DNA of 64,000 bases, from positions 259,872 through 323,871 of the forward strand of contig NW_002060945.1 in assembly GCF_000150275.1 (NCBI RefSeq), in the 5' to 3' direction. The first letter of the stretch is position 1, and each line of letters starts with the position of its first letter. Positions 5,083 to 61,166 of the stretch are shown one piece after another. Below the pieces are notes generated by a model that searched no databases, was not told the DNA's origin, and was given only the letters and a program-made list of their open reading frames with translations. This stretch comes from Trichoplax adhaerens. Taxonomy: Eukaryota > Animalia > Placozoa. A program made the position numbers and the translations under genes.

Positions 5083-8000
5083 ATGGAAGAAGACTTAGCT
5101 CAACACTATCACGCTGCACTGCAAGAAGTAGAAGTACTCAAACAAGACTATCGCAACAGGATCGTCTCTCTAGGTAAAGCTTGTTGATGTTCATGACTTC
5201 ATGGACTAGCAAATCTGACCGATTAGTGTAGACAATAATTCTAAACCCTGTAAATTTGCGAGCTTACTTTCCTCTAATGCGTGGAAAGATTCCAATCTTT
5301 AAACTGTCAGACCGCGTTAACATTTATATAAATTTGCTTTGACTATGAAATGACGATAATTATTGGCCATTTGCAGAATGATCGAGACGGTTAAACTATT
5401 TCAATTAAAGTCATTGATCATACTGCAAATTTCCCTTAATTACTACTATAGTCGAACCGAGTGGATGCTAGTTAGGTTGAAATAGAGCCAGTGCCTCTTA
5501 GTTCACTTTGCAGCTCATAGCGCTAAAGGTACGGGGCCTTTCGTAAGGGAATATCCCACAGGACAGAGGAATTCTAGCTTAACTCTATTCTGTTTTCTCT
5601 ACACCCCTTTATCGGTTCATAGCTGAATAGTTTAGGGTTATAAATTTCGACTATCTATCTCTTTTCTAGCACGTTACTAGTAGCTTAGACAGTAGCGCTT
5701 TGAATGTTTGCAATATCATTGTTTGCAGCCCTGATTCCATGGAGGAACTGCAGAGCAGCTTAACTCTATTCTATTTTCCTCGAACACCTTTATCGGTTCA
5801 TAGCTGAATAGTTTAGCGGTGTAAATTTCGACTATCTATCTCTTTCTAGCACGTTACTAGTAGCTTAGTCAGTAGCGCTTCATAGAGGAACTACAGCTTA
5901 ACTCTATTCTATTTTTCCTAAATTCCTTCATAGCTGAATACTTTAGCGGGTGCAAATTTCGCCTATCCATCTCTTTCTAGCACGTTACTAGTAGCTTAGT
6001 TAGTAGTACTGTACATTGAATGTTTGCAATATCATTGTTTGGAGGCTTGATTTCCATAGAGGAACTACAGCTTAACCTATATTCTATTTTCCCAAATTCC
6101 TTCATAACTAAATAGTCTAACGGTGCAAACTTCGGCTATCCATTTCTTTTCGAGCACTTTGCTAGAAAAGAAATCAGTAGGACATTGAATCTTTACCATA
6201 AACATATTCCATACAGTACATACAGTACGTACAGTGTATTATCGGTAGCGGTACCGCACATTACACCAGCTCGTATAGTAAAATGTTCTACGGTCGAGTA
6301 GAGTGATCCACTGTAGTGGTTTAAGCCATACTGTATAGTACAATGTCTGCGATTTACAACGCACAGTATAGTGTACAGTACTGCTATGGTCTACTGTCCA
6401 ACCTGCTGTAGCTTAGGCATTTTTTTTCTCAGTGGACAAGAACTAGACCGATATTGCTGAAATTGGTGAAAAATGAAACCCCAATGACACTATATCAGAG
6501 TGTACTGACATTATAGAGACAAGAATCACATAGGAATGGTAATTTAAGAGCTAATAAACTGATAGGACAAAGAATAAGTTCATTTTATTCTGCAGTGAAG
6601 GTTTATTAAGTGATTACAGTTGTACCAAGAGTGTAACCTGCATTTTAATGAAATGTCCAGTAATGTCTTAGTAGGAAGCACCAATTTATACATAGTTTAT
6701 TACTGTTGTAGAAGGCAGTGAAAGGATAATTTGAATGAAATGTCCAGTAATATCTTAGTAGGAAAGCAACTATTTATACGTAGTTTATTGCTATTGTAGA
6801 AGGCAGTGAAAGGATAATTTGAATGAAATGTCCAGTAATGTCTTAGTAGGAAAGCAACTAATTGTACATAGTTTATTGCTATTGTAGAAGGCAGTGAAAG
6901 GATAATTTTATCTATCTCTTATAGCTGGTGATGGATTGAATTATTCGTCCGTAATTTTAATGATAAAAAATTGTAAAAATGTTAGTAGGAAGATACCAAC
7001 TTATTCGACGTGTTTTATAGTAATTGCACAATACAGTGAACGAATAATTTGATCAATTTATTACAGTGGATACAAATGATTTTGTCAACAATTGTAAAAA
7101 TCCTAGTAGGAAAGCATCAAGTTAGGTGTATTTCATTGTTATTGCAGAACACAGTGAAAAGATAACCCTTCATTAGTTTGTTACAGTCAATGGAATTGTC
7201 AAAACTATAAAAATCTTAGTAGGAAAGCACCAAGTTAGACGTATTTCATCATGATTATTGCAGAATACAGTGAAAGGATAACTCCTTATCAATTTGTTAT
7301 AGTCAATAGAAACCCATTTTCAGTAATTTGAATGAAAAAATGGCATAGGTTAGTAGAAAAGTACTAGCATTGAAGAATGAATGCTTCTTTCATTAGTATA
7401 GTAAAGCGCAATGAAAGAAGAAGTTCGTAAATTTGTTCTACGCATAGACAGCGAATAGGAATAATCGATTCATTGGTTATAATAATAATTATTACAATGA
7501 AAAGTAAATATTATAATACTAGCATCACTAGGCTTGACTGACAAACCAATTTGCTCAATGCTTCGATAACGCAATTTCTTTAGGGTTTGCGCTGCCACTG
7601 CTATAAATTGATGTATGTACGTTGTGTAATGCTGTAAAGTATTGGACTCGTACGTGTCATCATGCACACCGACTACACATGGTTTGTTTCTCATTGTTAC
7701 TCAAGTCTAATGCATTAATTACTGTAATTATAGATGGCAGAAATGAATTACTACCTGATGATGTCTTACAAATGCAGCAAGAAATACAAAATATGCTCAA
7801 TGAGCGTGAATCATTGGAACAAGAGTTACTTAAAAGGTTGATGGATCAATTAGGTGGAAGCTTTCAAGAACAAGTTGAACAATTACAAGCTCAACATCAG
7901 CAAGAATTAATTTCTTTAGAGGAACAACTGAAAGCAGGCAACGCAGTTGAAACCGACGAAAATGGTATGACGTACAAGGATAAATACGAAGAATTACTTG

Positions 8001-11000
8001 GACAACAAAGTAACCTTGAGGATCAAATCACTCAACAGTTAATTGAAAAATTTCAAGAACAGTTGGCTGTACTACAACAGCAACATGATGAAGAAATTGC
8101 TGAATTAAATAATCAATTGCAAAATAATACCGCCAAGAATGCAAGCGATAGTCATACTATCGAATTACAAAATAAGATAAGTGATCTTGTAAAGCAATTG
8201 GATGATAAAGATGAAGTACATCAACAACAAGTTGAAAATATTAAACTTGAAATGACACAACAAATATTACAAGAAGTTAATTCACAATTTCAAAACAGTA
8301 TTGATCAACTACAGCAACAACATGAGCAAGAAATGACTGAATTAAAAATTCAACTACAGAATAGTAGTAATTCCGATAGTATACAAACTCAAGCTATCGA
8401 AATTCAACAATTACAAGATGAGATGAACGAATTAAAAAAAGCTCATAAATTAGAATTGGAAACTATACATCAAGAAACAATGGATAAAGTAATGGATGAA
8501 TTATCTGTTGGATTTCGTGAAAGTTTAGAACAGCAAAAAACTGAACACGAACAGGAAATGGCCAATACTTGCGCTACATTAGAAGCTCAAGTTAGACAAG
8601 AAAATAATGAACGTGTTGAAGAATTGCAAAATAAATTAACTGAAATGGATGAACAACATCGAGCAGCATTGGAGAATTTAGAACAAGCTGTAGCACAGCG
8701 TACTATGGAAGAAGTCCAACAACAGCTAGAACAATTACAGACTGCTCATGAACAAGAATTGTCTGAATTAAGAATTCAACTTGAATCGCAAACCAAGCAA
8801 CAACAATCTGATCAAAGAGTAACTGAATTGGAAAATGCTTTAATTGAATTGCAAGAAAAACATCAAAATGAATTAAATGAAGTTGAGGCACAAGTTGTGG
8901 CACGATTAATGAATGAAATGGAAGTTGGTTTTCAACAACAATTGCAAAACATGCAAGCTGAGCATGAACAAACAATCGCTGAATTAAATAGCCGACTTGA
9001 GTCGACTACAGCTGACAACAATGAAAATGAAGCGTTAAAAGCAACTTTAGCCGATATGCAAGAACAACACCAATTAAAAATACAAAATTTAGAGCAAGAA
9101 TTAAGCGAAAAATTAATGAAAGATATGTCAACTGAATTTCAAAATCAATTAGAACAGTTACAGTCGCAATACGAGACAGAATTAGCTAACCTACGTAATC
9201 AAAGAGATGGAGAACAACAATCAGCAACAGCAAATAATGAACAAGAAATTCGAGAAAAAATTATAGAAGAAATGTCTATTGGCCTACAACAACAAATGGA
9301 ACAAATCCATACAAAACATGAAGAAGAAATGGTTAATCTTCAAAATCAAATGATTGAAGAACAACAAAATCAAGAGCAAGAGATTAAGGATAAATTAATG
9401 AATGAATTAACAACTGGATTTCAACAGCATCTTCAGGAAATAGAAGCTAAACATGAAGAAGAATTAAATAATGTAAAATTACAACATGAGAATAATAGTG
9501 CAGCGAATGATGATGTGGCCAATGCAAAAGTTACAATTTTAGAAAATCAAATACAAGAAATGACGGAACAACATCAAAGTGTTATGAAAAATTTAGAACA
9601 GGAAATAACTCAACGTTTAATTGATGAAATGTCAGCTGGTTTTCAACAAAAATTTGATCAAATTCAAGAAGAATATGAGCAAAAAATTTTAATGTTAGAA
9701 AATCAATTGCAAAACTTTCAAGAAAGTAATCAACAATTACCGTCATCTAAGCAACAAGAATTAGAAGAGCAAATTAAAGTATTGGAAGAACAACATCAAT
9801 ACACAGTTGACAATATGGAGCAAGAATTAACTGAACGATTAAAGACTGAAATGTCTGCTGGATTTCTAGAACAGCTAGAAACACTTCAACAAGATTATGA
9901 GCTAAAAATTACAACATTGCAAGATCAAGTGAAAAATATTGATGAACTAACACTGACCAATGATACACTTACAGCTAAAATCAACGAATTAACTGAGCAA
10001 ATGATAAATAATGAAAGTGCTAACGCAAGAGTAACAGAATTAGAAACTGCTTTATTAGAAATGAAAGAACAATATGATAATGCTTTACAACATCAAGCTG
10101 CAATGGATAATTCTCAAGTAATTATAGAAGAATTACATGCTAAAATTAATGAAAACAATGAATTTCATGAACATGCAATGCAAAACTTAGAAATTAAAAT
10201 TGTTCAGCAGTTAATGGATGAAATGTCGTCTGGTTTTCAACAACGATTGGATACGATTCAAACCAAATATAACGAGGAATTATTAAGTATCAAAAGTGAT
10301 ATGTTAGAAAATACTACAACAACTGAAGAAGTTGAAAAATATAAAAATGAAATTGAAGAGATGAAAGTAAAATTCCATGAAGAATCAATGATGAAAGAAC
10401 AAGAAATTATACAACGTGTTATGGCAGAGATGACTGTTGGTTTCCAACAAGTACAACAAGAACATCAAGATTTGATGAAGAATCAATTAGATGAGAATAT
10501 CAAAGTAAGCCAAGATAAAATTCAACAGTTGGAACAATTTATTGACGATTTGAAAGCTGAACATGAATTAACAATTGCTAATAACGAAGAAGAAGTAACA
10601 TTGCGCCTCGGTAATGAAATGAAAAAAGAATATCAACTACAGATAGAACAATTACAACAACAACATAACGATGAATTAGAAAAATTACAAATTCAATTAG
10701 ATACTCAAAATACAATGCAGAATGCTGATGATGAATTAATTCAATTGCAAGCTAAAATAGCCGAAATGGAAGAAATGCATAAGGTACAATTGGCAACTTT
10801 TGAGAATGAAATAACTCAACGACTCCTAAATGAAATGTCGGTTGGATTCCAACAACAATTGGATACGATACAATCACAACATCAAGAAGAATTATCCAAC
10901 TTACAAACGCAATTACAAGATACAAATTCTAAGTTGATTGATCATCATGAAAATACCGACAACGATCATGCAGAAGTAACTGTATTAAGAAATCAAATTA

Positions 11001-14000
11001 AAGATAATGGATTACTAATTAATCAGTTAAGATCAGATCATGAAGTGGAATTGAATAATTTAGAGAGTGAAATTTTACAACGTATATTCATTGAAATGGA
11101 TGCAGGTTTCAAGCATCATATCGTCCAAACTCGAAACGAGCATGCGCAAGAATTGCAAATCCTACAAGATCAATTATTGAATCAAAGGTCTAATGACGAT
11201 AACGCGAATGATGCTAAAATTCAACAATTACAACATGAATTAGATACGTTACATGAAAATCACGAACAAATTCAACAACAACATCGCGAAGAAATTGATA
11301 AGATAAAATTAGAGCAAGTCGATGAAAATGAGGTAGTTACGTCGTTAAAATCAAAGATGAAAGAAATGGAGGATCTACATCAGTTACAATTTGTGCAATT
11401 GGAACATGAAATTTTAAATAAGGTGATGAAGGAAATGTCACTAGGATTTCAACAACAATTAGAGCAGTTACAAACACAGCATGATAAAGAATTGATGGAT
11501 GTTAAACAGGAATTGAATACGTTACTTGCAACTGATGCGAGTGCCAATAGTAGCGCTTTATATTCAGTCAATAAAGAGGGTGAACACATTAAACTGGAAA
11601 TAACTCAGCAAATGATGGAGGAAATATTACCAAAATATATGGAGCGATTGCAAGCTATACAGCAACAACATCAACAAAACATTGATTCAATTCAAATTGA
11701 ACCGTTAAATGACGACGAAGACAACAATAAAGTTGCTTTATTACGACAACAGATCCAAGAATTACTACAGAATTACTCAGCGGAAGTACTAAAATTTGAT
11801 GAGCTACTGATACAAGAAATTACATCGGATTTAACAGGTGATTTTCAAAGGCAACTACTAAAGATTGAAAAGGAATATCACCATGAAAAAGATAGTTTAG
11901 CGAAAAATGCATTGAATAATGGTGATGATAATTCATCAATCGTTATTGAATTAAAGCAACAATTAGATTTAATGGAGAAAGAACATTTAAGAAAAGAAGA
12001 AGAATGGTCTGCAACTTTTGATGAAAAACAATTAGAAAATGATAATTTACAGAATCAAATAACAGATCTTCAACAGAAACTTTTTGTTCAGCAAAGTGAT
12101 AATAAGGACAAATATGAAATTAAACCTAACCAACTGGTGGAATTACAAAGTAGGAATGATGAATTGAAGCAAAAGATAGATGAAAACGAACGTGAGAGTA
12201 TACTACATCAGGAAAATTCTATGACAGAGATTAAGTTACTGCAAGAACAACTCGAACAAGAAAATGTATCGTATTTAGCCGCATTAAAAGACGCTGATGA
12301 GGCAAACTTAAAGTTGTCTCGTTTAGAAAATTCTTTAAAATTGGATGAAGTTAAAAATATTACCGATCCTGAAGAGTTTAAGAAGATAATTGCACAACTC
12401 GAAGAACGTCATGTAATTGAAAAAGAATCTTTAGAAAAAGAATTGACTGATAGGTTGATGAATGAGATCTCGTCTGAATTTCAAGAACAGCTTGCTAATT
12501 TACAAGTGAATCATGAGGCTGAAATTACCGTTTTAACACAAAAACTTGAAGATGCTGGAGTTAATATCACCAATGAGGAAGAGCTTAATAAAGAAATACA
12601 ACTTCAGCGCCACATTACTGAGCTGGAGAATAAAATATATGACATGAGAAGTAATCCTAGTCAAATGGAAAATATCGAACATGTAGTTATAAATCGACTG
12701 ATGCTAGAAATGTCGGCTGGCTTTCAAGAGCGATTTCTTGCATTACAAAGTAAACATGCAAAAGAAGTAGATGAAATCAAGTTAAATTTTTCTGACAACA
12801 GCGAAAATAAATTAACTGAACAAAGTCAAGCACAAGATTCTACGAAGAATTCATTGCATTTGGAACAAAATGATAACGAAGAAATTGCTAGACTGTTAGA
12901 AAATATCTCGAAACTACAGAATGAACGAGACACCGCTCAGGAAGAAACTGAACAACTTAAATTACAATTATCCAAAAGTAAGATCGCTACAACGGATATA
13001 CCACAAAATTTTGAAGAACAAATTGATCGTCTTATTGTTGAACATGAAAAAGAAATGGCAGCCATGGAGAATGATTGGAAAAAACGTTTGGTTGAAGTTA
13101 CAGAAAGTAAAAATATGTTGATAAAATCTCGCCAGGATCTAGAGGATTTTACACAAATGCAATTGCAAAATAAAGATCGCCAATATGAACTTGATATACG
13201 GCAAATAGAAGAACTTAACCGTCTCAAAATAGAAGAAATTAAGCAGGATTGTAATACTTTGATAAAACAAAACGAAGACTGGGAAGTTAAATACAACAAT
13301 TTACAAACTGATATGGATATTAAGTGTAAAGCTTTAGCAAGTGAAATTGCTAATTTAAAAACCCTTAGTATAAAAGATGAAGATGCTACTATTACGAAGC
13401 TAAAAATTGAATTACAACAAATACGAATAGAATGTGATGAAAAGATAAAGAAACTGGAGTTAGAATTACAAGAAGAAAAAGATGGTGGTAAGGCTAGGTT
13501 AATGGAACGGGTTACGGAGATCACTGACGATTTTAACAAGCAAATAGAAAATTCAAATTCCTCGTGGCAGGTCCGGTTAGAACAACAAGAATTGAAATAC
13601 ACAGAAATGAATGATAAGTACAAAGAAGCGATGGAAAAATTATTTAGGAATTCAGACGACTTAAAAGAACCGGAAAAGAATGAATATACTGAAATACTTC
13701 GTACTCGCGATGAAGAGCTAGTTAAACGCCTTGATGATAAAGATAATGAGCATCAAGTTGCAATAAGATTATTAGAACGTAAATGGCGGAAACGATTAAG
13801 CATTATTACAGGTGAAGAATTGCCATCTGATGATGCTGAAAGTGAAGATGATTATTCTGCTTCAAATAATGAAACTATAGAACAACTACGATTTCAATTG
13901 CAAAAGTTAGAAGAAGAACATGCAATTGATAGAAGTAATATGGAGCAAGAAATTACGCAAAAATTAAAATTAGAACTTCGTGAAGAATTTGAACAGAAAT

Positions 14001-17000
14001 TAGATGAAGCTGTAGAACATTATCGACAACAGATTGCGACATTACAACAAGCTGTAGGGGACAGTGATGGTGTGCTGTCACTTGAAGGTAATTCAACAAA
14101 ATTACAAGAATTACAACATAAATGTGATCAACTAGTAGGAATTGTTGAAGAACTAGAAGCTTTACGTGATGAAGATGAACAAAATCACCGTGAAGAACTT
14201 TCACACTTAAAACAGCAACATCAGGAACAGATTGAATCGTTAATTTCAAATCAAAATAATGCAATAACCTTATACCCCGATGACAGTAAAGACGTTATAA
14301 AGAAATATGAGCAAAAAATTGCTGACATTAAGAAAGAACACCAAGACACCATTGAATCGTTAACGGAAGAACTAGGTGCAAAAATGGAGCAACGTTTGTT
14401 AGCGTTGGAACATGAACATGAAACTGAACTTGAAAACAAAGCTCAAACAGTAGTAGAGGAAGTGACAAAAATTTTTGAAGCAGAATTTGCCGAAAAATTA
14501 GAAGCTTTGCGTATAGAATTAACAGAAGATAACGCAAAAGAAATTGAGCAGTTGAAGCTTCAACATGCTGAAGAGTTGCAACAAGTTAATGATCTTTACG
14601 AAGGTGAAGTAGATTCACTTAAAAAGGAGCACGAATTAGCGAAGCAAAAGTCTGATACTAGTGATGAAAGATTACAAACGCTTAAAGCTAATATTGAACA
14701 GCATTATGAAGAAGAGATGGAATCTGCTAAAGCGGCTATGTTGAAAGAGATAGAAGAAATGGTAGAAAGCATGGAAAGCGCCGCTCAAAAACAGTTAGAA
14801 AATCTTCAAGAAGAATATAACGTTAGAGAACAAGAATTATTATCGTCATTTGAAAATGAAAAAACGGCATTAGTTCGTCAAATACAAGAAGGAACAGAAA
14901 GTAATGTAGAATTGAAGATCTTAACAATTAAAGAAGATTATGAGAAACGAATATTGCAAGAGCGAGCAGAATTTGACGAACAATTACAGAAGTTAAAAGA
15001 ATCTCATGAATACGAATTGGAGTTATTAAGCAAGGAGCATCCTGATGATAGTAATAATGAAAGAATTACAGCAATGCGTGAAAGTATTCAACGTGAATTC
15101 GATGTCAAAACACTTTCATTAACGGAAGAATCGCAAGATATGGCTAAAAAACTTACAAAATTACAACATGATTATAAAGAGAAAAGTAAGGAATTAAAAC
15201 GGTCAAAGGCTGAGTTAGAAACACTAAAAAGCTCATACAAAGAACAATTAGAGGTAATGCCTGCATGCGTACATTAGGATAAAATTAATAGTATTAACGG
15301 GAATAGTACAATATTAGTAAGTAATTAGTATACAAAGCAATTATTAAACTAACGCTGACTGGGTTATTGTTAACAACAGGGCCCTAGTCAAAAAGATGAA
15401 GTTGAAATTAGCCGTTATAAGCAATTGATTGAACAACTTGAACAACAAGTAAAAGATCTAAGCCAGCAAAATGTTAGTAGTTAGCCGTATGTAGGCTGAT
15501 ATTTAATTTGTTTAAAATTATGACATAGTATTAACATAGAATTATATTTAGGATGAATTAACTGCAGTGTCTGATTTATTGGACAAGAGTGACAGCGAAG
15601 TTAGTTTAATATTATAATTTACAATTTATATTGAAATTAAAGATGATCTATGAAGACCTCTGTCAATATTATATCTAATTTTGTTTTTACCATTGCTTTT
15701 GTTGATAATTTTGTAGCTGATTAAAGACAACGGTCAACTCAAACAGCAGCTTTATCAACTTAATGAGAAATATCAATCAGCTTTATCTGATATAGAAAAA
15801 GAGAAAGATAAGCAAAAGAAACTCATAGGGACACTACGTAATGAACAAGAGAATTTATCAAAGATTAGGTACTACAAGATATAATTGATAATTCTCAGAT
15901 CCTGTGATAATGCGAATTAGTCTCATACTAAACGCAATCGTAAATTTGATAGTGTAAAATATTTATATGCATGTAATATTACTTTATAATATGTAGTAAA
16001 TCGCATTATGATGGTTGTATCATTTCTGGATTGTTATATTTAGGGACGGGACGCAACGTACTAGTCAAATATTGCGAAATATTTTAAAAAAGGTTTTATT
16101 GTCGGATATTGCCATTGAAGATTACCTTACAACATGTACTACTAAACTATCGCAATATGAAGATATTTCTCGTATAGGTATGAATATGTCTTAATTACTT
16201 TGGCGATAATTTATAATTCGTCAAGTACGAAAATTCATAATTTCTATAGTTTTACTGTCCCAACTTGCAATAACCACTTTTAATTTTACTTCAGTTAAAA
16301 TTAGGCTACCATCGGAAATTGGGAGCCCAAACTCTACTGAGGCTGTCGAACTTAATATGAGACTAGATAGTACATTTTCTAGCGAGGATATCGACAGTAA
16401 TTGTGCGGAATTATCAGAAAGTATGGATGTGATAAAACTCGTGTCTGTATTACTTTATGTATTATTGCGGAGTTTTTTGTTTGCCATGCCATTGCTTTCT
16501 TAGTGATAATGTTAATGACTCAAAAGTTCAATCACTTTATATTTTGAATAATGTTCATAACTGTGAGTGCTCTAAAAGTTTTTATAGTATTATCTACAAT
16601 AACTTATGTTGATATGTAATATCAGTTGCAATACTATACTATCAGCTATTATTATGGCTTTGATATTAATATTTTGCTTTAACTTACCCGGATTTAATAT
16701 CTCTGTAGTGATACTATCAAGACTCCAGATCTCCATCAGAAGATTTGTGGGAGTACTTAAAACTACATTTTCTCAGGTTCGTAACGCTGCGTGTACTAGT
16801 CTACTAGATTATATTTATTGTTTTTTGACACACCTTAGTAGCTCTTTAACACAATTAACGACGTTATTAAAATTTTTTAATGTGCACATGACTACTGCTA
16901 ATTGCAGTTTGCAGATGTTTATGATACTCCCAGAGTCCATAATCAAGATTCTCCTTCTAACCGAGTCGATCTACATAGACAGCTATTACAAGAACTAGAT

Positions 17001-20000
17001 AGTAAAGATGATCTTACAATTAGGCTTCGTCAAGCCGAGAAAAGCATGAAGCTGCTTACGCAAGAAAGAGATCGCTTATTACAGGAGAATTATGATATTA
17101 AAATGGCTCGTGATATATCTGATGTTACTGTTAGTAAAGGGGCATCGCAGAATGAGAAATTAATGTTAGAATTATTAATGAGAGAGAGATCAGTCGAGCT
17201 AAAAGAGAAAATAGCTGAAAATCACATCATGGAACAGAAATTAGCAGACGTCGATACTGATTGCCGAAAATTAAAAGAGCAAGTAAAGCAACTAGAATTG
17301 GATAGTAAAAATTTAGAATCATCTTACCAAGACAGCCTTGCTACTAATCGCAAATTGCAAGCTGATTTATATCAAAAGAATGCAGAAATCAGTATTATAG
17401 AGGAAAATTTACAGCATAAATCAAATCGTTGCCAAAAATTAGATACCGCAGTTTCAGAGAATATTAATGAAGTACGCCGCCTTGAAAGCATACTACGCGA
17501 TAAAGTTATCGAGTTATCCGTTAACGATAGAAAGCTTCAAGAGAAAATACTAACCGTCCAGCGATTGGAAAAGTTAAATAAAGATAAGATCGCTGAATGT
17601 CGAAATTGGGAATTAAATGCCAAAGATAAAACTATGGAATGCAACATACTTCAGCAGCGATTAGACAATAGAGTAGTAGAAATAGAGCATCTTGAAAAAG
17701 TAAATCGAGAAAGATCGACACAATTAGAAGCGTTACAATTGGAAACTAGAAATTCACAATCTGAGAACGATATCTTACGTACGAAATTGCAGAATGCATT
17801 TGATGATAATAATAAATTAGAGGCTGAAATTCAAAAAAGGATAATTAGCGAAGAAATTGAAGCAAATCTGAAGGAAATGATGTTAGAAAAGCGTAAATTA
17901 GAAGGTCAAGTTAACGAACTAGAGGTTGTTATTAGTACTATGCGTGAGCAAATTACTAAGGCAAATGAAGAGAATGCTATTGTAAGCAAACAATTGAAAG
18001 ATTTTACTGTCGAAAATGATAGCTTACGGACAGAGCTTAGCGGTAAAGAGGATGAGTATCAAACCTTATTGACCGCGTATAAGGACAAGATATCTGATGA
18101 TGAAAAGTTAAAGGAGAAATATTTAGCACTTGCTAATGAAAAAGCAAATTTATTGTCGGAATTAAGCCATGAACGTGATAGTACTGATAATTTAAAATCA
18201 AACCTTAAAGAACAGAAAGATAACTTTAATAAAATTTCACGAAAGTTGGATCAAGTGGAGACAGAACTAACCGAAAAGGAAGATCAGAGAAGGAAACTTA
18301 GTCAGGAATGTCATAGCCTTCAACTACAAATTGAATTATTGAGAACACTGGTCCATGATAAACCTGATTCACCTCTTAAAAGTGAATTAACAATTGCGCA
18401 AAGGAAAAATGATACCCTTGTGGCACAAATTAAAACCTTACATAGCGATTGTAGTAAATTTAAAGATGATGTAATCTCTCTACAAAGCCATGTTAACGAC
18501 TTAACTATAGCACTAAATGAAGCAAAGAACCACGAAAAAACTATGGAAGATACTCTTAAGTCTTTGCAATCAGAAGTGATAGAGGTAAAATCTGTTTTGC
18601 AACAGAAAATTTCGACACTAAAGGATTTAAATAATCAAAAAGCTGAAATCGAACAAGAGCTAATATCACTATCTGATACACATAAGCAAGTACTAATAAG
18701 TAAGGATGATATTCAAAATCAATTATTTGAAGAACTTCAGCTGAGATTGGCTTATGAACGTGATATTAAGGAAGGAAAGCTTATTAGACTTAGTAATCGC
18801 ACTGAAGAACTAACTCGTGAACTTCAGGTGAAACTTGAATCAGAAAGAGCATTACAACGTGAAAGGCAACAATTATCTGACGAACTAAAACAATTATTAT
18901 CAGTCATTGAAGAACGAAAATCTGAAATAGTTGAATTAAAAGAAGAGAAACAGCAAGCAATTCAGGAATTAAACATCAAACGTGATAATATAAATGATCT
19001 TGAAATGCAAGTATTGTCTATGCATAAGCAAATTGATAATTTACGGCAAAATAATGACGAACAGGAGCATCTATTAAATAAAATGACACTAAATCTACAA
19101 GCAACGCAACAAGAATTATTTAAGGAATTGCAGGATAAAGTCAATATTGATATTCGACATCGTGAACAAACTACAATCCTTATGGAAGAAATTGAAGCTA
19201 AAAGTCAGTCCGAAAAAGTGTCTAGACAAGATTTAGAAAAAATGGTTAGTAGACTATTTAATGAATTGCAAAGACGTGTTGAATTAGAACGTTCGTTTGT
19301 AAGCGTCCGTGAGCAATTGCAACAAAATTTAGAATCAGCTGCGGATGTTCATCAACGATTAGAACATCGGGTGAAAGAGTTGACTACGATAGTAGGCCAT
19401 AAAGAACAGTACATCAATGAACTATGTTCTGAAAGGCGGAATATAGAAGAAGATAAAGCGAATCTTTTAACCCAATTGAATGAAGCCGAAAAAGTTAGTG
19501 CAACGAACAATACCCAATTGGAGGAATTACGAGCGGCAATGCTAAATCTGGATGTAGAAAAGGCCGAGATTGAAGTTTCTAAGCAACAAGTTGTTAGTGA
19601 AAAGCTTCATTTACAAGAAATACATGATGAAACCGTAAAATTAAATGAATTTCTTCAGAGCAGTAATAATGATCTTCAAGCACAGAGAGAAGATTTGATT
19701 TCTGTTAATCGCCGATATGAAGAAGAAACTAAAACTTTACGTGAATTACTTGCAAAAAATGCAGATGAAACTCGTACAATTGTATCAGTACACGAAAATC
19801 TTGAGAATCTCTTGGAAGAAAATACCAGATTGTTAGCTGATCTAATTGTACAGTTTGACGATTTTCAGCAGGAGTCAGCTATTGACAACGTCGAAGATAA
19901 GCATGGGAATATAAAACAGCAAGAATCAATCGATAAATTCGCTAAGTTTTGTGAAATCAATCTAAGACGCTTTCAATCTCAAATTGAAAAATTGCGTAGC

Positions 20001-33596: not shown

Positions 33597-33612
33597 GTAT
33601 AAAATATAAATC
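33597..33612 (+). promoter_or_regulatory. TATA-like element upstream of the proposed first exon of CYP51 copy A
   Basis: GTATAAAATATAAATC lies ~55-65 nt before GCC-ATG at 33664. The background is AT-rich, so this is weak on its own. Confidence 0.3.
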
Positions 33613-33663
33613 AGTTAGTCAGCGTCATTTATTTCTTTGCACTTTTATTACCTTCCACTCGCC

Positions 33664-49143: not shown

Positions 49144-54136
<4,993 letters not shown>

Positions 54137-54599
54137 TCTTGCCCCTTCAACAATTCTAATTGTAGCAAATACTACTTGCGATGACGTATAGAAATACATA
54201 GTTGTAAGTCAATTTGAAAGTACTTGCAGCAAAAAAGACATCATTATTTCACTTCTACGTTAGTGAGACACGTTTTTGTCTTTAAACTAAAATGAAAACT
54301 TTAAGTATTATGTATCGGAATATTTGATATCAGTCAGGACAATTCTGTCAAAATGTTCATTTTCACGAAATGCTATTTATTCATGAGAATGCGTATGTTA
54401 GATTGCAAACGCTATAGAGTAGTTTTTAATAGGCAAAGGAAGTACTGTAATCGTACATTCAACAAGTCTTCAATACAGAACACCTCATCACATTCGTATT
54501 ACTATGCGTATTACTTTCAGATTATGCGTTATCACTTTCTTTTAGCAATGTCATGTGCATTGTATTTGTATTCGTATAGTAACTGTAGCTTTCGATCAG

Positions 54600-55440
54600 T
54601 ATCTTGTACGAACAGTATGATCGAAATATAGCATTGGAATTTATAAATTATAACACAGTTGTAATTAAATTCAATCCAGTTAAAATGTCAGCGGATAGTA
54701 ACGGCTTTTATAACAATTTATTCTAAAGTCAATAGCTATTGAACTATAACTTATAAGTTAGTTAATCTTGCTGATGTTACAACAGTATATGCAATACTTT
54801 CAATGCAATGCAAGCCACATGTATTGTGCATCGTGTATCAATTATAGCTTTCAATCAACATCTTTTACGGACAGTATGATTGAAATGTAGCATTGGAATT
54901 TGTAAACGGTAGCACAGTCTAAGTACAGTAGTGCTTTGAATGCAAATCATACCACATGTACGTATTGTGCGTCATGTAGCCATTGCGGCGTTCAATCAGT
55001 TGCTTTACGAATAGTACACTATGATCGAAATGCAGTATTGGAAAATGTAAATGATAATATATGCAGTAGCATGCATGCAATACAAACCACATGTACTGTA
55101 CTCTAGTGTACATTGTGTAGCAACTTTAAATCGGTTGATTTCAGAACAATATGATGGAAATGTAGCATTGGAAAATGTCAATGAGAATATGGTATATGTA
55201 GTAGTGTGCATGCAATACAAACCACATGCATTGTGCCTTGTGCAGTAACTCTAACTTTTAAAATCGGCTGATTCAAGAACAGTATGATTGAAATGTAGCA
55301 TTGAAACATGGAAATGGTGCCATGCAAACGACAAGTATTATGCATTGTGCAGTAAGTATAACTTACTTAAATCGGTTGATTGAAGAATACTGTACAGTAG
55401 TATGATCAAAATGTAGTACAACAGTGGAATTTGTCAATGG
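54600..55440. repeat. Degenerate tandem repeat, ~6 copies of ~120-150 bp, between LSS and CYP51 copy B
   Basis: Anchor ACAGTATGAT(C/T)GAAATGTAGCATTGGAA at ~54612, ~54871, ~55019, ~55146, ~55279 and ~55399. ATGCAATACAAACCACATG also recurs. Confidence 0.85.
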
Positions 55441-56354
55441 TAATATACTGTTCGGTAGTGTGAACCGAGTATCTCCTGCATAAATTGTGAATTTGTACGT
55501 AGGTATGATAACATTTTTCTACATTGTGCAATACAGTAGAGTAAAAATATCAACCAAATCCATGAATAAATATTTGGTAGTTCTCAAGTTCCGTTTTCGC
55601 TCAAGTGCAAAATAAACATTGTCGCAGGTAAGCATAGCGTCAACTCAGTTGAATGTCTATCATCAAGCACTCATCATCCGTACCTATTGGATACTGGCGT
55701 CGATGGCATACAAGGTGATATATAATTTATTTGGACGTGTCTACGGAGTCACTTATTTGATTGTAATTTACGCAGTTTTGTTGTTCTTGATAGCGTTTCT
55801 AACGTTTTATTACTCTCTACTTTATGATGAAATGAAACTATTTTACGTGTTGGTTGTATAATTTTGTTTGGCATTGAGAAGATTGAGTCGAGTGAAATGT
55901 TGACTGAGCTTGGCACTGCCATGTTTTGCATGAAAACAAACTAACTGGTCGAGCATTGCTGTCTTTGAGTTGAGCTACTATTCATACAGTACTCCTACTT
56001 TGCAATGGATAGTCCAAATTAGGATGATTTTGTTATTCAATCAAGTCTTCTCTACCCATTGGTAGTCTATCTAATCTTTTTATCATGAATTATCAAGGAA
56101 TAACTTACCAAGAAAAAGAATTTCACTGGTAAACAATCTTCAAGTTGCTCAGTGAAATGGAGGATTGACAAGATAGGCAACTAGTGACTTACTGTACATC
56201 CAACTATAGTACACAGGATTAGCATGGAGTACATATAGTACAGTACAATAAGTACAAGAGTTTGGCCTTGTTTCATTTCAGTACCGAACACTGACTGACA
56301 GGACGCTGGACAGTGGACAGGCTTCGAAGGGTTAAAAGGTAATGGAGCCATATT

Positions 56355-56460
56355 GAATGAACCAATCAAAAGAGAATCAATCGATCATGACCATGACGTG
56401 ATGGAGTTATCCAATGAGATGCTAGAATCCTTCCTTATTATTCGCAATTGGAGTGACTCG
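56355..56460. promoter_or_regulatory. Candidate shared (bidirectional) promoter module: three CCAAT boxes around an ATGACGTGAT element
   Basis: CCAAT at 56362 and 56411, ATTGG at 56447, ATGACGTGAT at 56393-56402. It lies in a locally GC-richer patch between the divergently transcribed LSS and CYP51 copy B. Confidence 0.35.
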
Positions 56461-56514
56461 ACCAGTACCAGACGACATGAGGGCCCGGCTCACTTTCATC
56501 ACAGACTGTCAATA

Positions 56515-57080
56515 AAGGTACACTGTGTACAGTACTATACTGTACACAGTGTACAGTACAATCGTGTGTAAAAAGTTTAAGTACTGTCAATTAAATTTAG
56601 TACTGTACTGTGAAATGCGCATGAGCTAACCCAGCTAACCAACTGTAAAACGCTATTAAAAATGAAAGATGTAGTACCTATGTAGAACGACCGGAAAAAT
56701 GCACCGTGCGGTACGTAATCCAACAGATGCTTGTTGTTTCATGCTCACTAAAGTGCTCACTCACTTAGCTATAACTTTTATTACCATACTTTTTACCATC
56801 GAGGTCAAAAATAACTTACCTACACACTGCCCTGTACAGTGTACAGTACATTACAGCACCGTACAATGTACTGTACTGTAATGAATCGTACTGTACAGTA
56901 TGTACTGTAGCGTACAGTATGTTCTCTACAGTACAAGTAAATATACTGTACACAGTCAAGTTACAATACTGTACAGTGATACATTGTACTGTGCTTTCTA
57001 CAGTATAACCCTTACTTACAGCGTTAACTCGACGCCATTACTACAGTACTCAAGTTAGGCAGCTACCGCGCAGTACTGTA
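56515..57080. repeat. TACTGTA/TACAGTA-rich low-complexity palindromic tract upstream of CYP51 copy B
   Basis: Many TACTGT/ACAGTA words. Perfect 17-bp inverted repeat at 56518-56554 and a 12-bp inverted repeat at 56841-56876. Confidence 0.8.
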
Positions 57081-57243
57081 TGACCCATTGAAGGTTAAGG
57101 CGTTACTCTGTCATACTTTCACTCGTACAGTAGGAAACTGCAGCACTCGGGTGAGAAATTTGAAAAGTTGGACGTGACTGCTATCCTCCAGTTGGACACC
57201 AGGCGTGGTAAATAGTGGTTGTACCTTTCAAAGTGGAAGAAAA

Positions 57244-60200
57244 ATGGCGCTAGGCGATCTTGGATATCAACTAATCAATCATGCTAGGACATTTATCGAC
57301 GGCTATGGCAACAGCACGCTTGTTCTGTTGGCAACTACGATCGTTTTAGCTATTCTTTTGGCCTACAAGCAGGTCAAATCGTCAGTAGCAACAAGAGGCA
57401 TGGTATGACAGCAGAACATACATAGTAGCATATGATACATTTTCCAATCATGTTGAATAAGTTAAGATATTCAATAAATTCAGCGATATCATCCAATGAT
57501 ACAGAGTAGATGATACAATCACTAGCATCCATTAGCCTACGTCAAAGTAACTACTTACAGCATAGACTGATTTTACAGCTACTACTGTATACTCATCACT
57601 TGCTACAATTGTGCTCAATGATATTGCATGGACTAGAGAATGAAACTTGATGACGTATCCAAGTCAATGATTCAGTTTATGTTATTCTTCAACTTGTTCT
57701 CCAATCGATTGCTTGCCCATTACTGCTACTGCTACTACTACTAATGACCAAAGTATTCGTTCCTCCTGATTTATTTATAATTCTAAATATTGTTCTCATG
57801 ATGTAGAATCTACCACCACACATACCATCCAGTATACCATTTCTTGGTTGCTCAATAGAATTCTCCAAAAATCCTATTCTCTTCTTGCAAAATGCTCACA
57901 AGAAGGTAAGCAATGCTGGAATAATATCTTATCATACATCTCTCATAAGTTCAAGTTAATGATTGTATACCGCTACTCCACTATTACAATATGAAAAGAG
58001 TCAAATGTTCAATTTACAATATTTGATCTTTCATATACTCATACTGGAGTGAGAAGGGTAAAGCAGAAACTTCTAAGACATTAGAATAATACTTATGGAT
58101 TAGTCTTACAAGTCCCTGGGTAAAGTATACTAATTATCCAATATTCTCTTTCCAAATACTAGTACATGCATTGTATAACGGTATACAACACTGCATGACA
58201 CTATTCAAATTGATTATTGAAAAGCATTTGAAAGTCAGATGCAAAAAATGACTAATAACTTTTACATGATAAAGTATGTAAAGCTAGCTGCTTGAAAGGA
58301 TTACCGTTTGTGAAATGATCAAGTGTGTTATTGCAGCATCGTAGTTATAAACTGTTGCCGCTATGACGATGATCTTATTAACCTTATCTATGCCACTTGT
58401 CTTATCTCCCCATATATACTCCATATTCGCATGACGTAAAAGTACGGGGAAGTATTCAGTTTTACTATGGTTGGCAGCACGTTTACGTACCTAGTTGGAT
58501 CAGAGGCCAGTTCACTCTTTTTTAATTCCAAGAATGAAGATTTAAACGCTGAAGACGTATATTCACAACTCACTACCCCGGTATTTGGGAAAGGCGTAGC
58601 TTACGACGTTCCACATAAGGTATCCGTAAGAAGAATGATGCAAACTGTGATACTTTGTGTCAGATATATTATTGGACATTTCTCACAATTCTGCATACCT
58701 TGGCCAACAACGTTTTTGATAATATAATCAATAATTGATTGAGAATCTAGTAATTAAAAGAAGTCAACATGTTTGATCCAAACTTTTGTCTAGGTGTTTC
58801 TTGAACAGAAAAAAATGTTCAAGACTGGACTTACCATTGCCAGATTTCAAAATTACGTACCTATGATCGAAGAAGAAACTCGTGAATATTTCAAACGATG
58901 GGGAAATGAAGGAGAAAAAGGTATAGCATTATAACTATGTCCAATCTTTTGTTAACTACTAAACTATATAAAGTAATAGAACCTTCTATCTGCTGTATTA
59001 TCGATGTGTATATTCCTATTGCTTAAGGTAATCAAATAGAAATAGTTACCTTGTGTTCTTCTTTATTTTAGATTTATTTGTTGCTCTTTCGGAGTTAATT
59101 ATTATGACGGCTAGTCGCTGCTTGCATGGTAAGTACAACAAATAGATTTCAATGTACATTATGGAATGATATAACATCAATGCTTCTCTTCCTGGTAATC
59201 GTATTGCACAATACATTTATTAAAAAGAAATTATCATATTCTAGGCAAAGAAATTAGGTCTTTACTGGATGAGAGAATTGCCCAACTCTATGCTGATTTA
59301 GATGGCGGCTTCACGCAGTTAGCCTGGCTTTTACCAGGTTGGATCCCCTTTCCGAGCTTCATGTATGTATCAATGATGATTTGATATACCGGCAGAGAGA
59401 TATAATTATAATACAATTAAAAATAATAAGACAAAACGTAATTACTTCATAACCATTTACAGTAAACGCGATAATGCCAACAAAGAAATGAAGAGAATTT
59501 TCCGCTCGGTAAATTGTATTAGATAGCGATGAATCAACATTAAATTTTGAATGTCATTCGATGGACAGGATGTATTTAATTTTTCTTGTATACAAATGTA
59601 ATAGGTTATTACAAATAGGATTAAGGAACAAAAATATGAAGATGACATGTTGAACACCTTGATAGAATCTAGTTACAGGTTACCATTGAGTAGAGTTGAT
59701 TAATAGAGAATAACATTCGTTAATGTAATACATTAGTGCTCGAGTACTTTAGCATGATAAAACGAGTTTTAAAATTGATCAATAGAATAATTTGGATATT
59801 AACTATGATATTATTATTTAATTCTATTTGTAGGAGCGGTCGCAAACTAACTGAAGACGAAATTGCTGGTATGCTTATTGCATTGTTATTGGCTGGCCAA
59901 CATACATCCTCAACAACAAGTTCATGGCTAGGCTTTTTCATTTCTAAAGATAAAAAGTGGCAGGTCGGCTGTAGACTTAATGCGATGCAATGACATCACA
60001 CATATAATTTCAAATCTTGTTGGAAATTTGTTATTAGCGACAGTTATTTGATGTGTATTAATTAATTATTCGATCGGACCGGACTTTATTTATGACACAG
60101 GATAGATTGATTGAGGAACAGCACGAAGTTTTTGGAGATGACGACGATTTGGAACCTTTATCTTATGAGAAGGTTTGACGTTGAACGTATTATCGAAATA

Positions 60201-61166
60201 GTTCTAATTTACGCGCACTAACAAAACTATAGTAGATAGAATTCAGGTTAGAATTGAATAACATGGCTCTTGGAATATTCCTGAGCGCACTTCTACGTTG
60301 ATATATCGCTATAATAAATATACTGTAATGCAGAAATAATTGCCGTTTCAAAAGTTTGGAGCTTTATCATTCGTCTCGTTCTTGCACTTATGATTGTTGA
60401 TGGCAAATTTTGATTTCGCGTTGATATTAAACGTATTTCTTATTTCATTGTAGTTGAAAGAATTAAAGCATCTAGATCGTACTCTCAAGGAGACTCTACG
60501 TCTTCGCCCACCCATCATGACAATGATGAGAATGGCTAAAACACCGCAGGTGCGAATTTATACTAATTGTACGTTGTATATCTGTTATGTGTCTCTAAGT
60601 CTTATTAAATAACAACTAGAGTATCTCAGTATACTATTAATAATAAAAATAGAAAGTTAAAGGTTACACGATACCAACTGGGCATCAGATATGTGTATCT
60701 CCAACCGTGAATCAAAGATTATACTCGGTGTGGAAAGACGGTGAAACTTTCAATCCTGATCGGTACGTAATTTAATTTATTTTTAACAAATAGTATGAAT
60801 AAAACACTCGTATTTAAATTTTGTCTATTGTCGGTTAAATCGAAATAGATTTGCTGAAGAAGGTCTTGATAACAGTGAAAAATTTTCATATGTACCTTTT
60901 GGAGCAGGTAAAGCCATTAAAATGATTATACATTTTGTGATATAATCGATGTTAGAGATTAAGTGCTTATTATAATCGCACATATAGGTCGACATAGATG
61001 CATTGGCGAATTTTTCGCTTACGTCCAAATAAAAACTATCTGGTCGGTTTTAATCCGAACTTACGAATTAGATTTGGTAGACAATTACTTTCCAGAAGTG
61101 AATTTTACGACCATGATTCATACACCAAGTCGTCCTTTAATTCGGTATAAGAAGCGTAGTTCATAA
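57244..61166 (+). CDS. CYP51A1: Lanosterol 14-alpha-demethylase, canonical (CYP51 copy B); 14 exons, ~500 aa
   Basis: Exons 57244-57402, 57807-57905, 58443-58619, 58794-58920, 59072-59128, 59245-59362, 59463-59508, 59605-59678, 59834-59963, 60101-60172, 60454-60549, 60653-60762, 60849-60907, 60988-61166. Motifs: N-terminal anchor [80 protein letters not shown] and TTMIHTP. Confidence 0.96.

What the first reader, a model, noticed from the sequence alone, without database searches (positions are those of the whole stretch)
5083..61166. PACT gene-CYP51-LSS block looks like the ancestor of two human loci (AKAP9-CYP51A1 and PCNT-LSS)
Seen: a PACT-domain gene lies immediately upstream of the CYP51/LSS cluster. 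Established: human AKAP9 is adjacent to CYP51A1 at 7q21, and its paralog PCNT lies a few genes from LSS at 21q22.3 (LSS-MCM3AP-YBEY-C21orf58-PCNT). Inference: a single ancestral PCNT/AKAP9-CYP51-LSS microsyntenic block was duplicated in vertebrates and resolved by reciprocal loss. This would make the LSS-CYP51 linkage very old rather than lineage-specific.
Basis: partly seen in the sequence, partly recalled or inferred. Interest (0 to 1): 0.85.

Follow-up and report, generated by a model that had tools for sequence, protein, structure and literature searches.

The report
Ancient pericentrin–sterol gene neighbourhood in Trichoplax
In this placozoan genome the single pericentrin/AKAP9-type centrosome gene sits next to lanosterol synthase and two CYP51 genes; starfish, lamprey and human keep parts of this neighbourhood, so it is probably over 600 million years old.

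Summary
The window comes from a Trichoplax genome: a flanking ORF is 99% identical to a Trichoplax sp. H2 protein.

Gene order:
- A giant coiled-coil gene (CDS 5083-27245, +) ends in the genome's only PACT domain.
- A 13-kb stretch follows in which I found no gene.
- Then CYP51a (40524-47198, +), LSS (54037-49144, -) and CYP51b (57244-61166, +). These are the genome's only CYP51 and LSS loci.

Evidence from other animals:
- In the starfish Asterias rubens, the gene just downstream of the PACT gene is a 725-aa squalene/oxidosqualene cyclase on the opposite strand.
- In sea lamprey, the gene just downstream of AKAP9 is CYP51.
- In acorn worm, the downstream gene is LSS-sized (745 aa) but unidentified.
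- Papers confirm the human orders AKAP9-CYP51A1 and LSS-MCM3AP-YBEY-C21orf58-PCNT.
- A PACT-domain tree does not reject a vertebrate-only PCNT/AKAP9 split.

So an ancestral PACT-LSS-CYP51 neighbourhood, later duplicated and thinned reciprocally in vertebrates, is well supported.

Not tested: whether human 7q21 and 21q22.3 belong to one paralogon, amphioxus and sponges, and direct LSS-CYP51 adjacency outside Placozoa. Scallop, a sea urchin and a snail-like genome showed nothing within 10 kb.

This is a new member of a known kind, conserved metazoan microsynteny. Interest is moderate.

The parts
1636..1665 (+). 3' end of an upstream non-coding exon of the PACT gene. Only its last 30-65 bases were seen.
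   Evidence: The loose 5' end of RNA-run contigs X10 and X6 maps exactly here.
4917..5170 (+). Exon of the PACT gene carrying the start codon (ATG at 5083). In-frame stops lie upstream of it within the same exon.
   Evidence: RNA-run contigs cover 4917-5170 and join it to 7731 with GT..AG ends.
7731..15277 (+). First giant coiled-coil exon of the PACT gene. The acceptor at 7731 is shown; the donor lies shortly before the stop at 15275-15277 and was not mapped. It contains 20 or more copies of a '...EMSxGFQQQLEQLQxxHExE...' repeat.
   Evidence: Open frame of 2551-2556 aa. Splice acceptor. No Pfam family matched.
16902..21437 (+). Second giant coiled-coil exon of the PACT gene. These are open-frame limits; the exact splice sites were not mapped.
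   Evidence: 1511-aa open frame. Only weak coiled-coil Pfam hits such as Rootletin and CENP-F.
21650..26329 (+). Series of small coiled-coil exons of the PACT gene. Limits are approximate.
   Evidence: + strand ORFs with heptad-rich, charged sequence, read directly.
26382..27245 (+). Last exon frame of the PACT gene. The PACT domain is at 26394-26651, followed by a low-complexity Ser/Arg-rich tail and the stop at 27243-27245.
   Evidence: PF10495 at 74.4 bits, profile positions 1-77 of 77, the only hit in the genome. Translation. Best named relatives are pericentrin and AKAP9.
27246..40523 (.). AT-rich stretch between the PACT gene and CYP51a. No gene was detected. The missing first exon of CYP51a may lie in it.
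   Evidence: No Pfam hit for the 10 longest frames, no Rfam family, no tRNA. One 127-bp tandem repeat at 39665-39900.
40524..47198 (+). CYP51a, the more divergent sterol 14-alpha-demethylase copy. At least 10 exons are collinear with CYP51b. The N-terminal membrane-anchor exon was not found.
   Evidence: Last exon matches human CYP51 at E 5e-25. Exons are collinear with lamprey CYP51 at 61.5% identity. It is one of only two CYP51 loci in the genome. No N-terminal exon was found.
49144..54037 (-). Lanosterol synthase (LSS), with about 22 small exons. The ATG is at 54037, the catalytic ADCTAE motif lies in exon 50755-50853, the last exon is 49147-49257 and the stop is at 49144-49146.
   Evidence: Matches to human LSS residues 17-60 (E 3e-8) and 440-471 (E 6e-10). 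SQHop_cyclase_N and _C fragments. Exon series read directly.
54038..57243 (.). 3.2-kb region between the divergently transcribed LSS and CYP51b. A shared promoter is possible. It holds a 133-bp tandem repeat (55016-55316) and the highest GC content of the window.
   Evidence: Coordinates. Tandem repeats. GC fraction of 0.385 at 56-58 kb. No SRE-1 consensus was found.
57244..61166 (+). CYP51b, the conserved sterol 14-alpha-demethylase copy. The first exon has an ATG and a transmembrane helix, followed by 11 further exons.
   Evidence: Exon 58467-58640 matches human CYP51 at E 4e-24. Identity to lamprey CYP51 is 65.7% over 472 aligned residues. The share of sampled words held in RNA runs is about the exon fraction of the gene. 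First exon.

Best explanation
The window holds a conserved piece of ancestral animal gene order. The single pre-duplication pericentrin/AKAP9 gene (PACT gene) lay next to lanosterol synthase and CYP51, which catalyse two consecutive steps of sterol synthesis. This was already so in the common ancestor of placozoans and bilaterians.

Trichoplax keeps all three together and has added a second, divergent CYP51 copy. In the vertebrate stem the block was duplicated, most simply by whole-genome duplication. Each copy then kept the PACT gene but only one enzyme gene: AKAP9 kept CYP51 (lamprey, human 7q21.2) and PCNT kept LSS (human 21q22.3, with three genes now between them).

Shown here: the gene order in Trichoplax, starfish, lamprey and human. 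Inferred: the ancestral three-gene block, the mode of duplication and the reciprocal loss. Nothing here shows that the neighbourhood has a function. The default reading is slow rearrangement. The head-to-head LSS-CYP51b pair may share a promoter.
For: - Trichoplax order and uniqueness of the genes.
- Organism: a flanking ORF is 99% identical to a Trichoplax sp. H2 protein.
- Asterias rubens: the PACT gene is followed by a 725-aa SQHop_cyclase gene on the opposite strand at 9.7 kb. This is the same convergent PACT/LSS orientation as in the window.
- Sea lamprey: AKAP9 is followed by CYP51 on the opposite strand at 3.6 kb.
- Saccoglossus: a 745-aa gene lies on the opposite strand at 2.8 kb. This is suggestive only.
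- Human and primate orders come from PMC10415907 and PMC13723271.
- PACT tree and AU test are compatible with a vertebrate-only PCNT/AKAP9 split.
- PF27598 (AKAP9_coil_N) is recorded on PCNT, AKAP9 and invertebrate proteins alike.
- Chance estimate (my inference): a given gene is an immediate neighbour of another given gene with odds of about 1e-4 per genome. Independent origin in three or four lineages is therefore not credible.
Against: - No non-placozoan was seen with all three genes together.
- Pecten maximus, Lytechinus variegatus and a gastropod-like assembly have no LSS or CYP51 within 10 kb of the PACT gene. Two unidentified ENA contigs also have none.
- Orientation differs. CYP51a is in tandem with the PACT gene here, but CYP51 is convergent with AKAP9 in lamprey and human. 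LSS is divergent from and upstream of PCNT in human (my knowledge).
- The human neighbours MCM3AP and YBEY are not near the window.
- The PACT domain is too short to resolve the tree. Trichoplax falls, on a long and unsupported branch, among the PCNT rows.
- Paralogon membership of 7q21 and 21q22.3 was not tested with a tool.
Confidence: 0.75

Rival explanations
1. Only PACT-LSS linkage is ancestral. CYP51 came to lie next to the PACT gene independently in placozoans (for example drawn to LSS as a co-regulated sterol pair) and in the vertebrate stem.
For: Outside Trichoplax, LSS and CYP51 were never seen at the same PACT locus. The Trichoplax CYP51 copies have a different orientation from the vertebrate one. 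Trichoplax has clearly remodelled the locus by duplicating CYP51.
Against: It needs two independent juxtapositions of the same gene pair, each with odds of about 1e-4 (inference). Lamprey and human share AKAP9-CYP51, so that linkage is at least as old as vertebrates.
Confidence: 0.12
2. The ancestral three-gene block is real, but the two vertebrate loci arose by a local or segmental duplication, or by a break of one block, rather than by whole-genome duplication followed by reciprocal loss.
For: The paralogon test was not run. The PACT tree cannot date the split. Three unrelated genes lie between LSS and PCNT in human.
Against: PCNT and AKAP9 form two jawed-vertebrate clades, while every invertebrate sampled has one gene. 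From my memory, not tested: bird PCNT lies on chromosome 7 (with HOXD) and AKAP9/CYP51A1 on chromosome 2 (with HOXA), which are classic 2R paralogons. One search shows passerine PCNT on a chromosome of about 39-41 Mb, which fits.
Confidence: 0.08
3. The neighbourhood is kept by selection. Regulatory elements or 3'-end overlap tie the sterol genes to the giant PACT gene as a genomic regulatory block. LSS and CYP51 form a small co-regulated metabolic cluster.
For: The linkage has survived in placozoan, echinoderm and both vertebrate paralogons. LSS and CYP51 catalyse consecutive steps (established biochemistry). LSS and CYP51b are head to head, 3.2 kb apart.
Against: Vertebrates split LSS from CYP51 without apparent harm. 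Several invertebrates have lost the adjacency. No SRE-1 consensus occurs in the window. The other sterol genes (SQLE and the ERG4/ERG24 family) lie on other contigs. Trichoplax is known for slow gene-order change (my knowledge).
Confidence: 0.15
4. All the adjacencies are coincidence.
For: Many gene pairs were implicitly available for a reader to notice. Three of the six invertebrate loci inspected showed nothing.
Against: The same specific pairs recur in four lineages, at immediate-neighbour or four-gene distance. The starfish and lamprey checks were made after the hypothesis was stated.
Confidence: 0.02

Closest known systems
Human AKAP9-CYP51A1 neighbourhood (7q21.2), also present in sea lamprey
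   Same: A PACT-domain gene has CYP51 as its immediate 3' neighbour.
   Different: In vertebrates CYP51 is on the opposite strand (tail to tail) and LSS is absent from the locus. Here CYP51a is on the same strand, 13 kb away, and LSS and a second CYP51 follow.
Human LSS-MCM3AP-YBEY-C21orf58-PCNT neighbourhood (21q22.3)
   Same: A PACT-domain gene lies within a few genes of LSS.
   Different: Three unrelated genes intervene in human. Their Trichoplax homologues lie elsewhere. LSS is upstream of PCNT in human (my knowledge) but downstream of the PACT gene here. CYP51 is absent from the human locus.
Asterias rubens 'AKAP9-like' gene and its downstream neighbour
   Same: A single PACT gene on one strand is followed by a roughly 725-aa oxidosqualene-cyclase gene on the other strand. 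Trichoplax has the same convergent arrangement.
   Different: The genes are adjacent in starfish (9.7 kb), whereas CYP51a lies between them here. Whether CYP51 is nearby in starfish could not be seen.
Conserved metazoan microsyntenic blocks (surveys by Irimia et al. 2012 and Simakov et al. 2013; recalled from memory, not read here)
   Same: Unrelated genes are kept as neighbours from non-bilaterians to vertebrates. Ohnolog regions are thinned by reciprocal loss.
   Different: I could not check whether this block is in those lists. The classic blocks involve developmental regulators and bystander genes, not two housekeeping sterol enzymes and a centrosome scaffold.
Drosophila Plp and other single invertebrate PACT proteins
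   Same: One giant coiled-coil protein with a C-terminal PACT domain per genome (invertebrate hits).
   Different: Flies have no LSS or CYP51 (my knowledge), so they say nothing about the linkage.

Membership tests
Pericentrin/AKAP9 (PACT-domain) family | C-terminal PACT_coil_coil domain (PF10495) | tested here: met
   74.4 bits against a cut-off of 25, full length 1-77 of 77, at 26394-26651 near the C-terminus.
Pericentrin/AKAP9 (PACT-domain) family | Very large, mostly coiled-coil protein | tested here: met
   Open exons of 2551 and 1511 aa plus about 1000 aa more, charged and heptad-rich. Only coiled-coil-type weak Pfam hits were found.
Pericentrin/AKAP9 (PACT-domain) family | N-terminal AKAP9_coil_N region (PF27598), recorded on many PCNT, AKAP9 and invertebrate members | tested here: inconclusive
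   No hit in the two giant exons or the upstream ORF at E<=1. I do not know whether the local Pfam copy holds this new model. The small exons were not scanned.
Pericentrin/AKAP9 (PACT-domain) family | Pro-orthologue of both PCNT and AKAP9 (single copy; vertebrate-specific split) | tested here: inconclusive
   Single copy in the genome. The tree is poorly resolved. The AU test does not reject vertebrate monophyly, p 0.756.
Pericentrin/AKAP9 (PACT-domain) family | Centrosome or Golgi targeting | not testable with these tools
   Needs localisation experiments.
CYP51 (sterol 14-alpha-demethylase) | Best matches are CYP51 rather than other P450s, across several exons | tested here: met
   Human CYP51 structures are the top hits for both copies (E 4e-24; E 5e-25). 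Both copies are collinear with lamprey CYP51.
CYP51 (sterol 14-alpha-demethylase) | Haem-binding FxxGxxxCxG motif and the CYP51 signature motifs (B' helix Y..F..P.FG.GV.YD; I helix GQHTSS) | tested here: met
   Read directly in both copies: FGAG...HRCIGE, YS(R/Q)(F/L)TTP(I/V)FG(R/K)GVAYD and AGQHTSS.
CYP51 (sterol 14-alpha-demethylase) | N-terminal membrane anchor | tested here: inconclusive
   Present in CYP51b, whose first exon starts at 57244. Not found for CYP51a.
Lanosterol synthase / oxidosqualene cyclase | Catalytic DCTAE motif and match to animal LSS | tested here: met
   The stretch [26 protein letters not shown] aligns to human LSS residues 440-471. The N-terminal exon matches residues 17-60.
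Lanosterol synthase / oxidosqualene cyclase | SQHop_cyclase N and C domains through to the C-terminus | tested here: met
   Exon fragments hit PF13249 and PF13243, up to profile position 318 of 319. The exon series was read directly.
Lanosterol synthase / oxidosqualene cyclase | Product is lanosterol rather than cycloartenol | not tested
   Would need the product-specifying residues in a spliced alignment, or an enzyme assay.
Conserved metazoan microsyntenic block | Same neighbour pairs in two or more distant phyla | tested here: met
   PACT-LSS is seen in Placozoa, Echinodermata and human. PACT-CYP51 is seen in Placozoa, lamprey and primates.
Conserved metazoan microsyntenic block | Retained broadly, not only in a few lineages | tested here: inconclusive
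   Absent within 10 kb in scallop, Lytechinus and a gastropod-like genome. Cnidarians lack CYP51 (PMC8110760). The 10-kb view is short for large genomes.
2R ohnolog regions resolved by reciprocal loss | Both regions belong to the same paralogon or proto-vertebrate chromosome | not tested
   The gene-level tables of PMC8302630 do not use gene symbols and were cut when stored. I have only memory-based leads (bird chromosomes 2 and 7, HOXA and HOXD).
2R ohnolog regions resolved by reciprocal loss | A pre-duplication outgroup carries all the genes in one block | tested here: met
   Trichoplax carries all three (this window). Starfish shows two of the three.

The most novel reading that the evidence does not exclude
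The pericentrin/AKAP9 gene and the LSS/CYP51 sterol pair are held together by selection, for example through shared regulatory elements or 3'-end overlap. That would make this one of the oldest functionally constrained non-developmental gene neighbourhoods in animals, and an ancestral two-step sterol 'mini-cluster'.
Probability: 0.15. Interest if true: 0.75.

Novelty: new member of a known kind. Interest (0 to 1): 0.55.

Why it matters
- It links two human loci, AKAP9-CYP51A1 and LSS...PCNT, to one ancestral block. It is a clean, easily taught example of duplication followed by reciprocal gene loss.
- It gives independent positional evidence that PCNT and AKAP9 are ohnologs of a single invertebrate gene.
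- It shows that two consecutive sterol-pathway enzymes were neighbours early in animal evolution. Metabolic gene clustering is rare in animals.
- It provides a marker block for ancestral linkage-group work in lineages that keep sterol synthesis.
- I found no paper describing it in ten full-text searches. It may still sit unnoticed in published microsynteny tables.

Tried and rejected
- Homology outside PACT. BLASTP with composition correction of the giant exons against ten full-length PCNT/AKAP9 proteins found only the PACT domain. Homology could therefore not fix the gene's 5' extent. RNA contigs did that instead.
- Human 21q22.3 neighbours. YbeY and SAC3_GANP (MCM3AP) homologues are not near the window. 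Only the PACT-LSS pair is shared, not the wider human gene order.
- Wider sterol cluster. SQLE and the ERG4/ERG24-family genes are on other contigs.
- SRE-1 consensus TCACNCCAC. No match in the window, against 0.44 expected by chance. This is uninformative.
- Identity of the downstream dynein heavy chain. PDB matches are too even across dynein classes to name a human orthologue, so I dropped it as macrosynteny evidence.
- Nakatani et al. supplementary tables. They hold no gene symbols and were cut when stored.
- P450 'genesis locus' paper and the early-deuterostome CYP51 paper. Neither is held.
- Loci that gave nothing. P0002, P0200 and P0108 are not on record. P0204 is too long for the tool. 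P0058 is only a transcript contig. ENA contigs L022 and L023 have no LSS or CYP51.
- Walking beyond 10 kb in starfish or acorn worm. I could not obtain any full-length LSS or CYP51 protein id, because all Trichoplax exons are far shorter than the length window of the homologue search.
- Spliced models. All searches were exon by exon, by reference. The only joined step was a frame check across the one RNA-supported junction, done inside a script.
- Human sequence. The human gene order comes from papers only.
Full report
**Organism and layout**

The window is G000:C1412:259872-323871, part of a 9.66-Mb contig in a 105.6-Mb, 1414-contig, roughly 31% GC genome. A single-exon GPCR ORF 55 kb upstream is 99% identical to '5-hydroxytryptamine receptor [Trichoplax sp. 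H2]'. The genome is therefore Trichoplax. The assembly size fits T. adhaerens v1, but that detail comes from my memory.

The ORF map and exon-level searches give the following order:
- PACT gene (+)
- a 13-kb stretch with no detectable gene
- CYP51a (+)
- LSS (-)
- CYP51b (+)
- the start of a dynein-heavy-chain gene, at about 62.8 kb onward

**The PACT gene**

Pfam PACT_coil_coil matches at 26394-26651 with 74.4 bits over the whole model. It is the only match in the genome. The sequence reads RYLRAEGYRKALVYQKKYLLLLLGGFQECE...RKFRIAGRSVIVILRLKFLVSKWRK.

The gene has two giant open exons of 2551 and 1511 aa, plus about a dozen small ones. None matches a Pfam family beyond weak coiled-coil hits.

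Contigs from an RNA-seq run (X10) and a second run (X6) cover 4917-5170 and join it by a GT..AG junction to 7731. Their loose 5' end maps to 1636-1665. Stops precede the ATG at 5083 in frame within that exon. The 1693-aa coiled-coil ORF just upstream of the window (L012:3401-8479) is a different gene.

**The sterol genes**

CYP51b (57244-61166) and CYP51a (40524-47198) have the same exon structure. They are 53-79% identical per exon, about 60% in the true coding frames. Both carry the haem-binding Cys motif and the CYP51 signature motifs. Human CYP51 is the top structure match for both. They are the only CYP51 loci in the genome.

Copy b is closer to lamprey CYP51 (65.7%) than copy a is (61.5%). 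I could not find an N-terminal anchor exon for copy a.

LSS runs on the minus strand from the ATG at 54037 to the stop at 49144. I read about 22 small exons directly. The N-terminal exon and the catalytic ADCTAE exon align to human LSS residues 17-60 and 440-471. The last exon reaches position 318 of 319 of SQHop_cyclase_C. It is the only cyclase locus in the genome.

LSS is tail to tail with CYP51a (1.9 kb apart) and head to head with CYP51b (3.2 kb apart). SQLE and the ERG4/ERG24-family genes are on other contigs. The cluster is therefore limited to the two consecutive steps: lanosterol synthesis and its 14-alpha-demethylation.

**Is the PACT gene the counterpart of both PCNT and AKAP9?**

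A search of 1.84 billion representative proteins with the PACT exon gave 362 hits. The best named ones are vertebrate pericentrins (57-61% identity). Next come Saccoglossus, Ciona, scallop and snail 'AKAP9-like' or 'pericentrin-like' proteins, and vertebrate AKAP9.

I built a tree from 98 PACT domains, leaving out proteins under 900 aa. It shows a jawed-vertebrate AKAP9 group (support 99) and a PCNT group (support 94). Lamprey, tunicate, echinoderm, hemichordate and mollusc rows lie between them. Trichoplax sits on a long, unsupported branch among the PCNT rows.

Forcing all vertebrate rows into one clade gave a better likelihood than the free quick search, and the AU test did not reject it (p 0.756). 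Co-orthology is therefore compatible with the data but not proven. The domain is too short to resolve the tree.

**Gene order in other animals (10 kb on each side of the PACT gene)**

| Species | Downstream neighbour of the PACT gene |
|---|---|
| Asterias rubens | 725-aa gene, opposite strand, 9.7 kb away, with SQHop_cyclase_N and _C (LSS). Same convergent orientation as in Trichoplax. |
| Saccoglossus kowalevskii | 745-aa gene, opposite strand, 2.8 kb away, no Pfam on record and no DNA delivered. LSS-sized but unidentified. |
| Petromyzon marinus | 489-aa P450, opposite strand, 3.6 kb downstream of AKAP9. The Trichoplax CYP51 exons match it collinearly at 60-79% identity, so it is CYP51. |
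| Pecten maximus | Nothing LSS- or CYP51-like in view. |
| Lytechinus variegatus | Nothing LSS- or CYP51-like in view. |
| Gastropod-like assembly | A RING/NHL gene. |
| Two unidentified ENA contigs | Nothing convincing. |

Cnidarians cannot be tested because they lack CYP51 (PMC8110760).

The human orders are confirmed from papers:
- AKAP9 is flanked by MTERF1 and CYP51A1 in a primate table (PMC10415907).
- The 21q22.3 order is FTCD, SPATC1L, LSS, MCM3AP, YBEY, C21orf58, PCNT, DIP2A (PMC13723271).

I fetched no human sequence.

**Interpretation**

By my estimate, a specified gene is the immediate neighbour of another specified gene with odds near 1e-4 in a genome of 10-25 thousand genes. PACT-LSS recurs in a placozoan, an echinoderm and (four genes apart) human. 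PACT-CYP51 recurs in the placozoan, lamprey and primates. The starfish and lamprey checks were made after the hypothesis was stated.

Common descent from a PACT-LSS-CYP51 neighbourhood in the placozoan-bilaterian ancestor is by far the simplest reading. Invertebrates carry one PACT gene, while jawed vertebrates carry PCNT (near LSS) and AKAP9 (next to CYP51). Duplication followed by reciprocal loss then follows naturally.

Three things are not shown:
- That the duplication was the 2R event. The paralogon assignment of 7q21.2 and 21q22.3 could not be read from the held supplementary files. My recollection that bird PCNT/LSS and AKAP9/CYP51A1 lie on the HOXD- and HOXA-bearing chromosomes is only a lead.
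- That LSS and CYP51 were directly adjacent outside Placozoa.
- That the linkage has any function.

Orientation is not conserved for CYP51, and several invertebrates have lost the adjacency. This argues for inertia rather than strong constraint. No SRE-1 consensus occurs in the window.

**Novelty and score**

Ten full-text searches found no paper that connects these four genes in an evolutionary sense. The large published microsynteny tables could not be checked.

Conserved metazoan microsynteny and reciprocal loss of ohnolog-region genes are well-known phenomena, so this is a new member of a known kind. It is a tidy and verifiable example that touches two medically important human loci, and it reveals an early animal pairing of consecutive sterol enzymes. 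Interest is moderate, at 0.55.

**Procedural notes**

- All protein searches of spliced genes were made exon by exon, by reference.
The only joined step was a frame check across the one RNA-supported junction inside a script.
- Read laying was given 5901 bases.

Noticed in passing
window 40524-47198 and 57244-61166: Trichoplax has two CYP51 genes flanking LSS, whereas animals normally have one. They share exon structure but are only about 55-60% identical in protein. Copy a is the more divergent, and its N-terminal membrane-anchor exon could not be found. Whether copy a is expressed or has a new substrate is unknown.
   Followed up: partly
window 54038-57243: LSS and CYP51b are transcribed divergently from a 3.2-kb region that may be a shared promoter. 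It contains a 133-bp tandem repeat (55016-55316) and the GC peak of the window.
   Followed up: partly
window 7731-15277: The first giant exon of the PACT gene holds 20 or more copies of a repeat about 60 aa long, with the core '(E/D)MSxGFQQQLEQLQxxHExE(L/M)'. No Pfam family matches it.
   Followed up: no
L012:3401-8479 (window -6599 to -1521): A second very large coiled-coil ORF (1693 aa, + strand) lies just upstream of the PACT gene and has no Pfam match. RNA contigs show it is not part of the PACT coding sequence.
   Followed up: partly
G000:C1394:733907-738528: Two ERG4/ERG24-family genes (sterol reductases of the DHCR7 / delta-14-reductase type) lie tail to tail within 5 kb. This is another pair of adjacent sterol-pathway genes in this genome.
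   Followed up: no
G000:C41:27-227 and G000:C952:2394-2489: The strongest YbeY matches in the assembly sit on very small contigs, and the weaker one is on the large contig C1412. The small contigs may come from a bacterial symbiont or contaminant.
   Followed up: no
L013-L018 (window 62.8-121 kb): Downstream of the block lie a dynein heavy chain gene (about 62.8-88 kb; class not resolved), SF3B1 (about 101.5-105.9 kb; PDB 5ife, E 3e-20) and two GALNT-like genes in opposite orientation (112-121 kb). An ABCF-family gene lies about 48 kb upstream.
   Followed up: partly
P0001 (Logan contig, 2441 bp): A 271-aa PACT-exon protein, 77-79% identical to the Trichoplax one, comes from a sequencing-run assembly. 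It is presumably from another placozoan lineage.
   Followed up: no
window 39665-39900 and 41920-42105: There are two-copy tandem repeats of 127 bp (just upstream of CYP51a) and 93 bp (inside a CYP51a intron).
   Followed up: no
window 2000-7900, run X4: Run X4, guessed to be RNA, covers introns and intergenic DNA in short contigs without splice joints. It behaves like DNA or unspliced material, so I did not use it as expression evidence.
   Followed up: no
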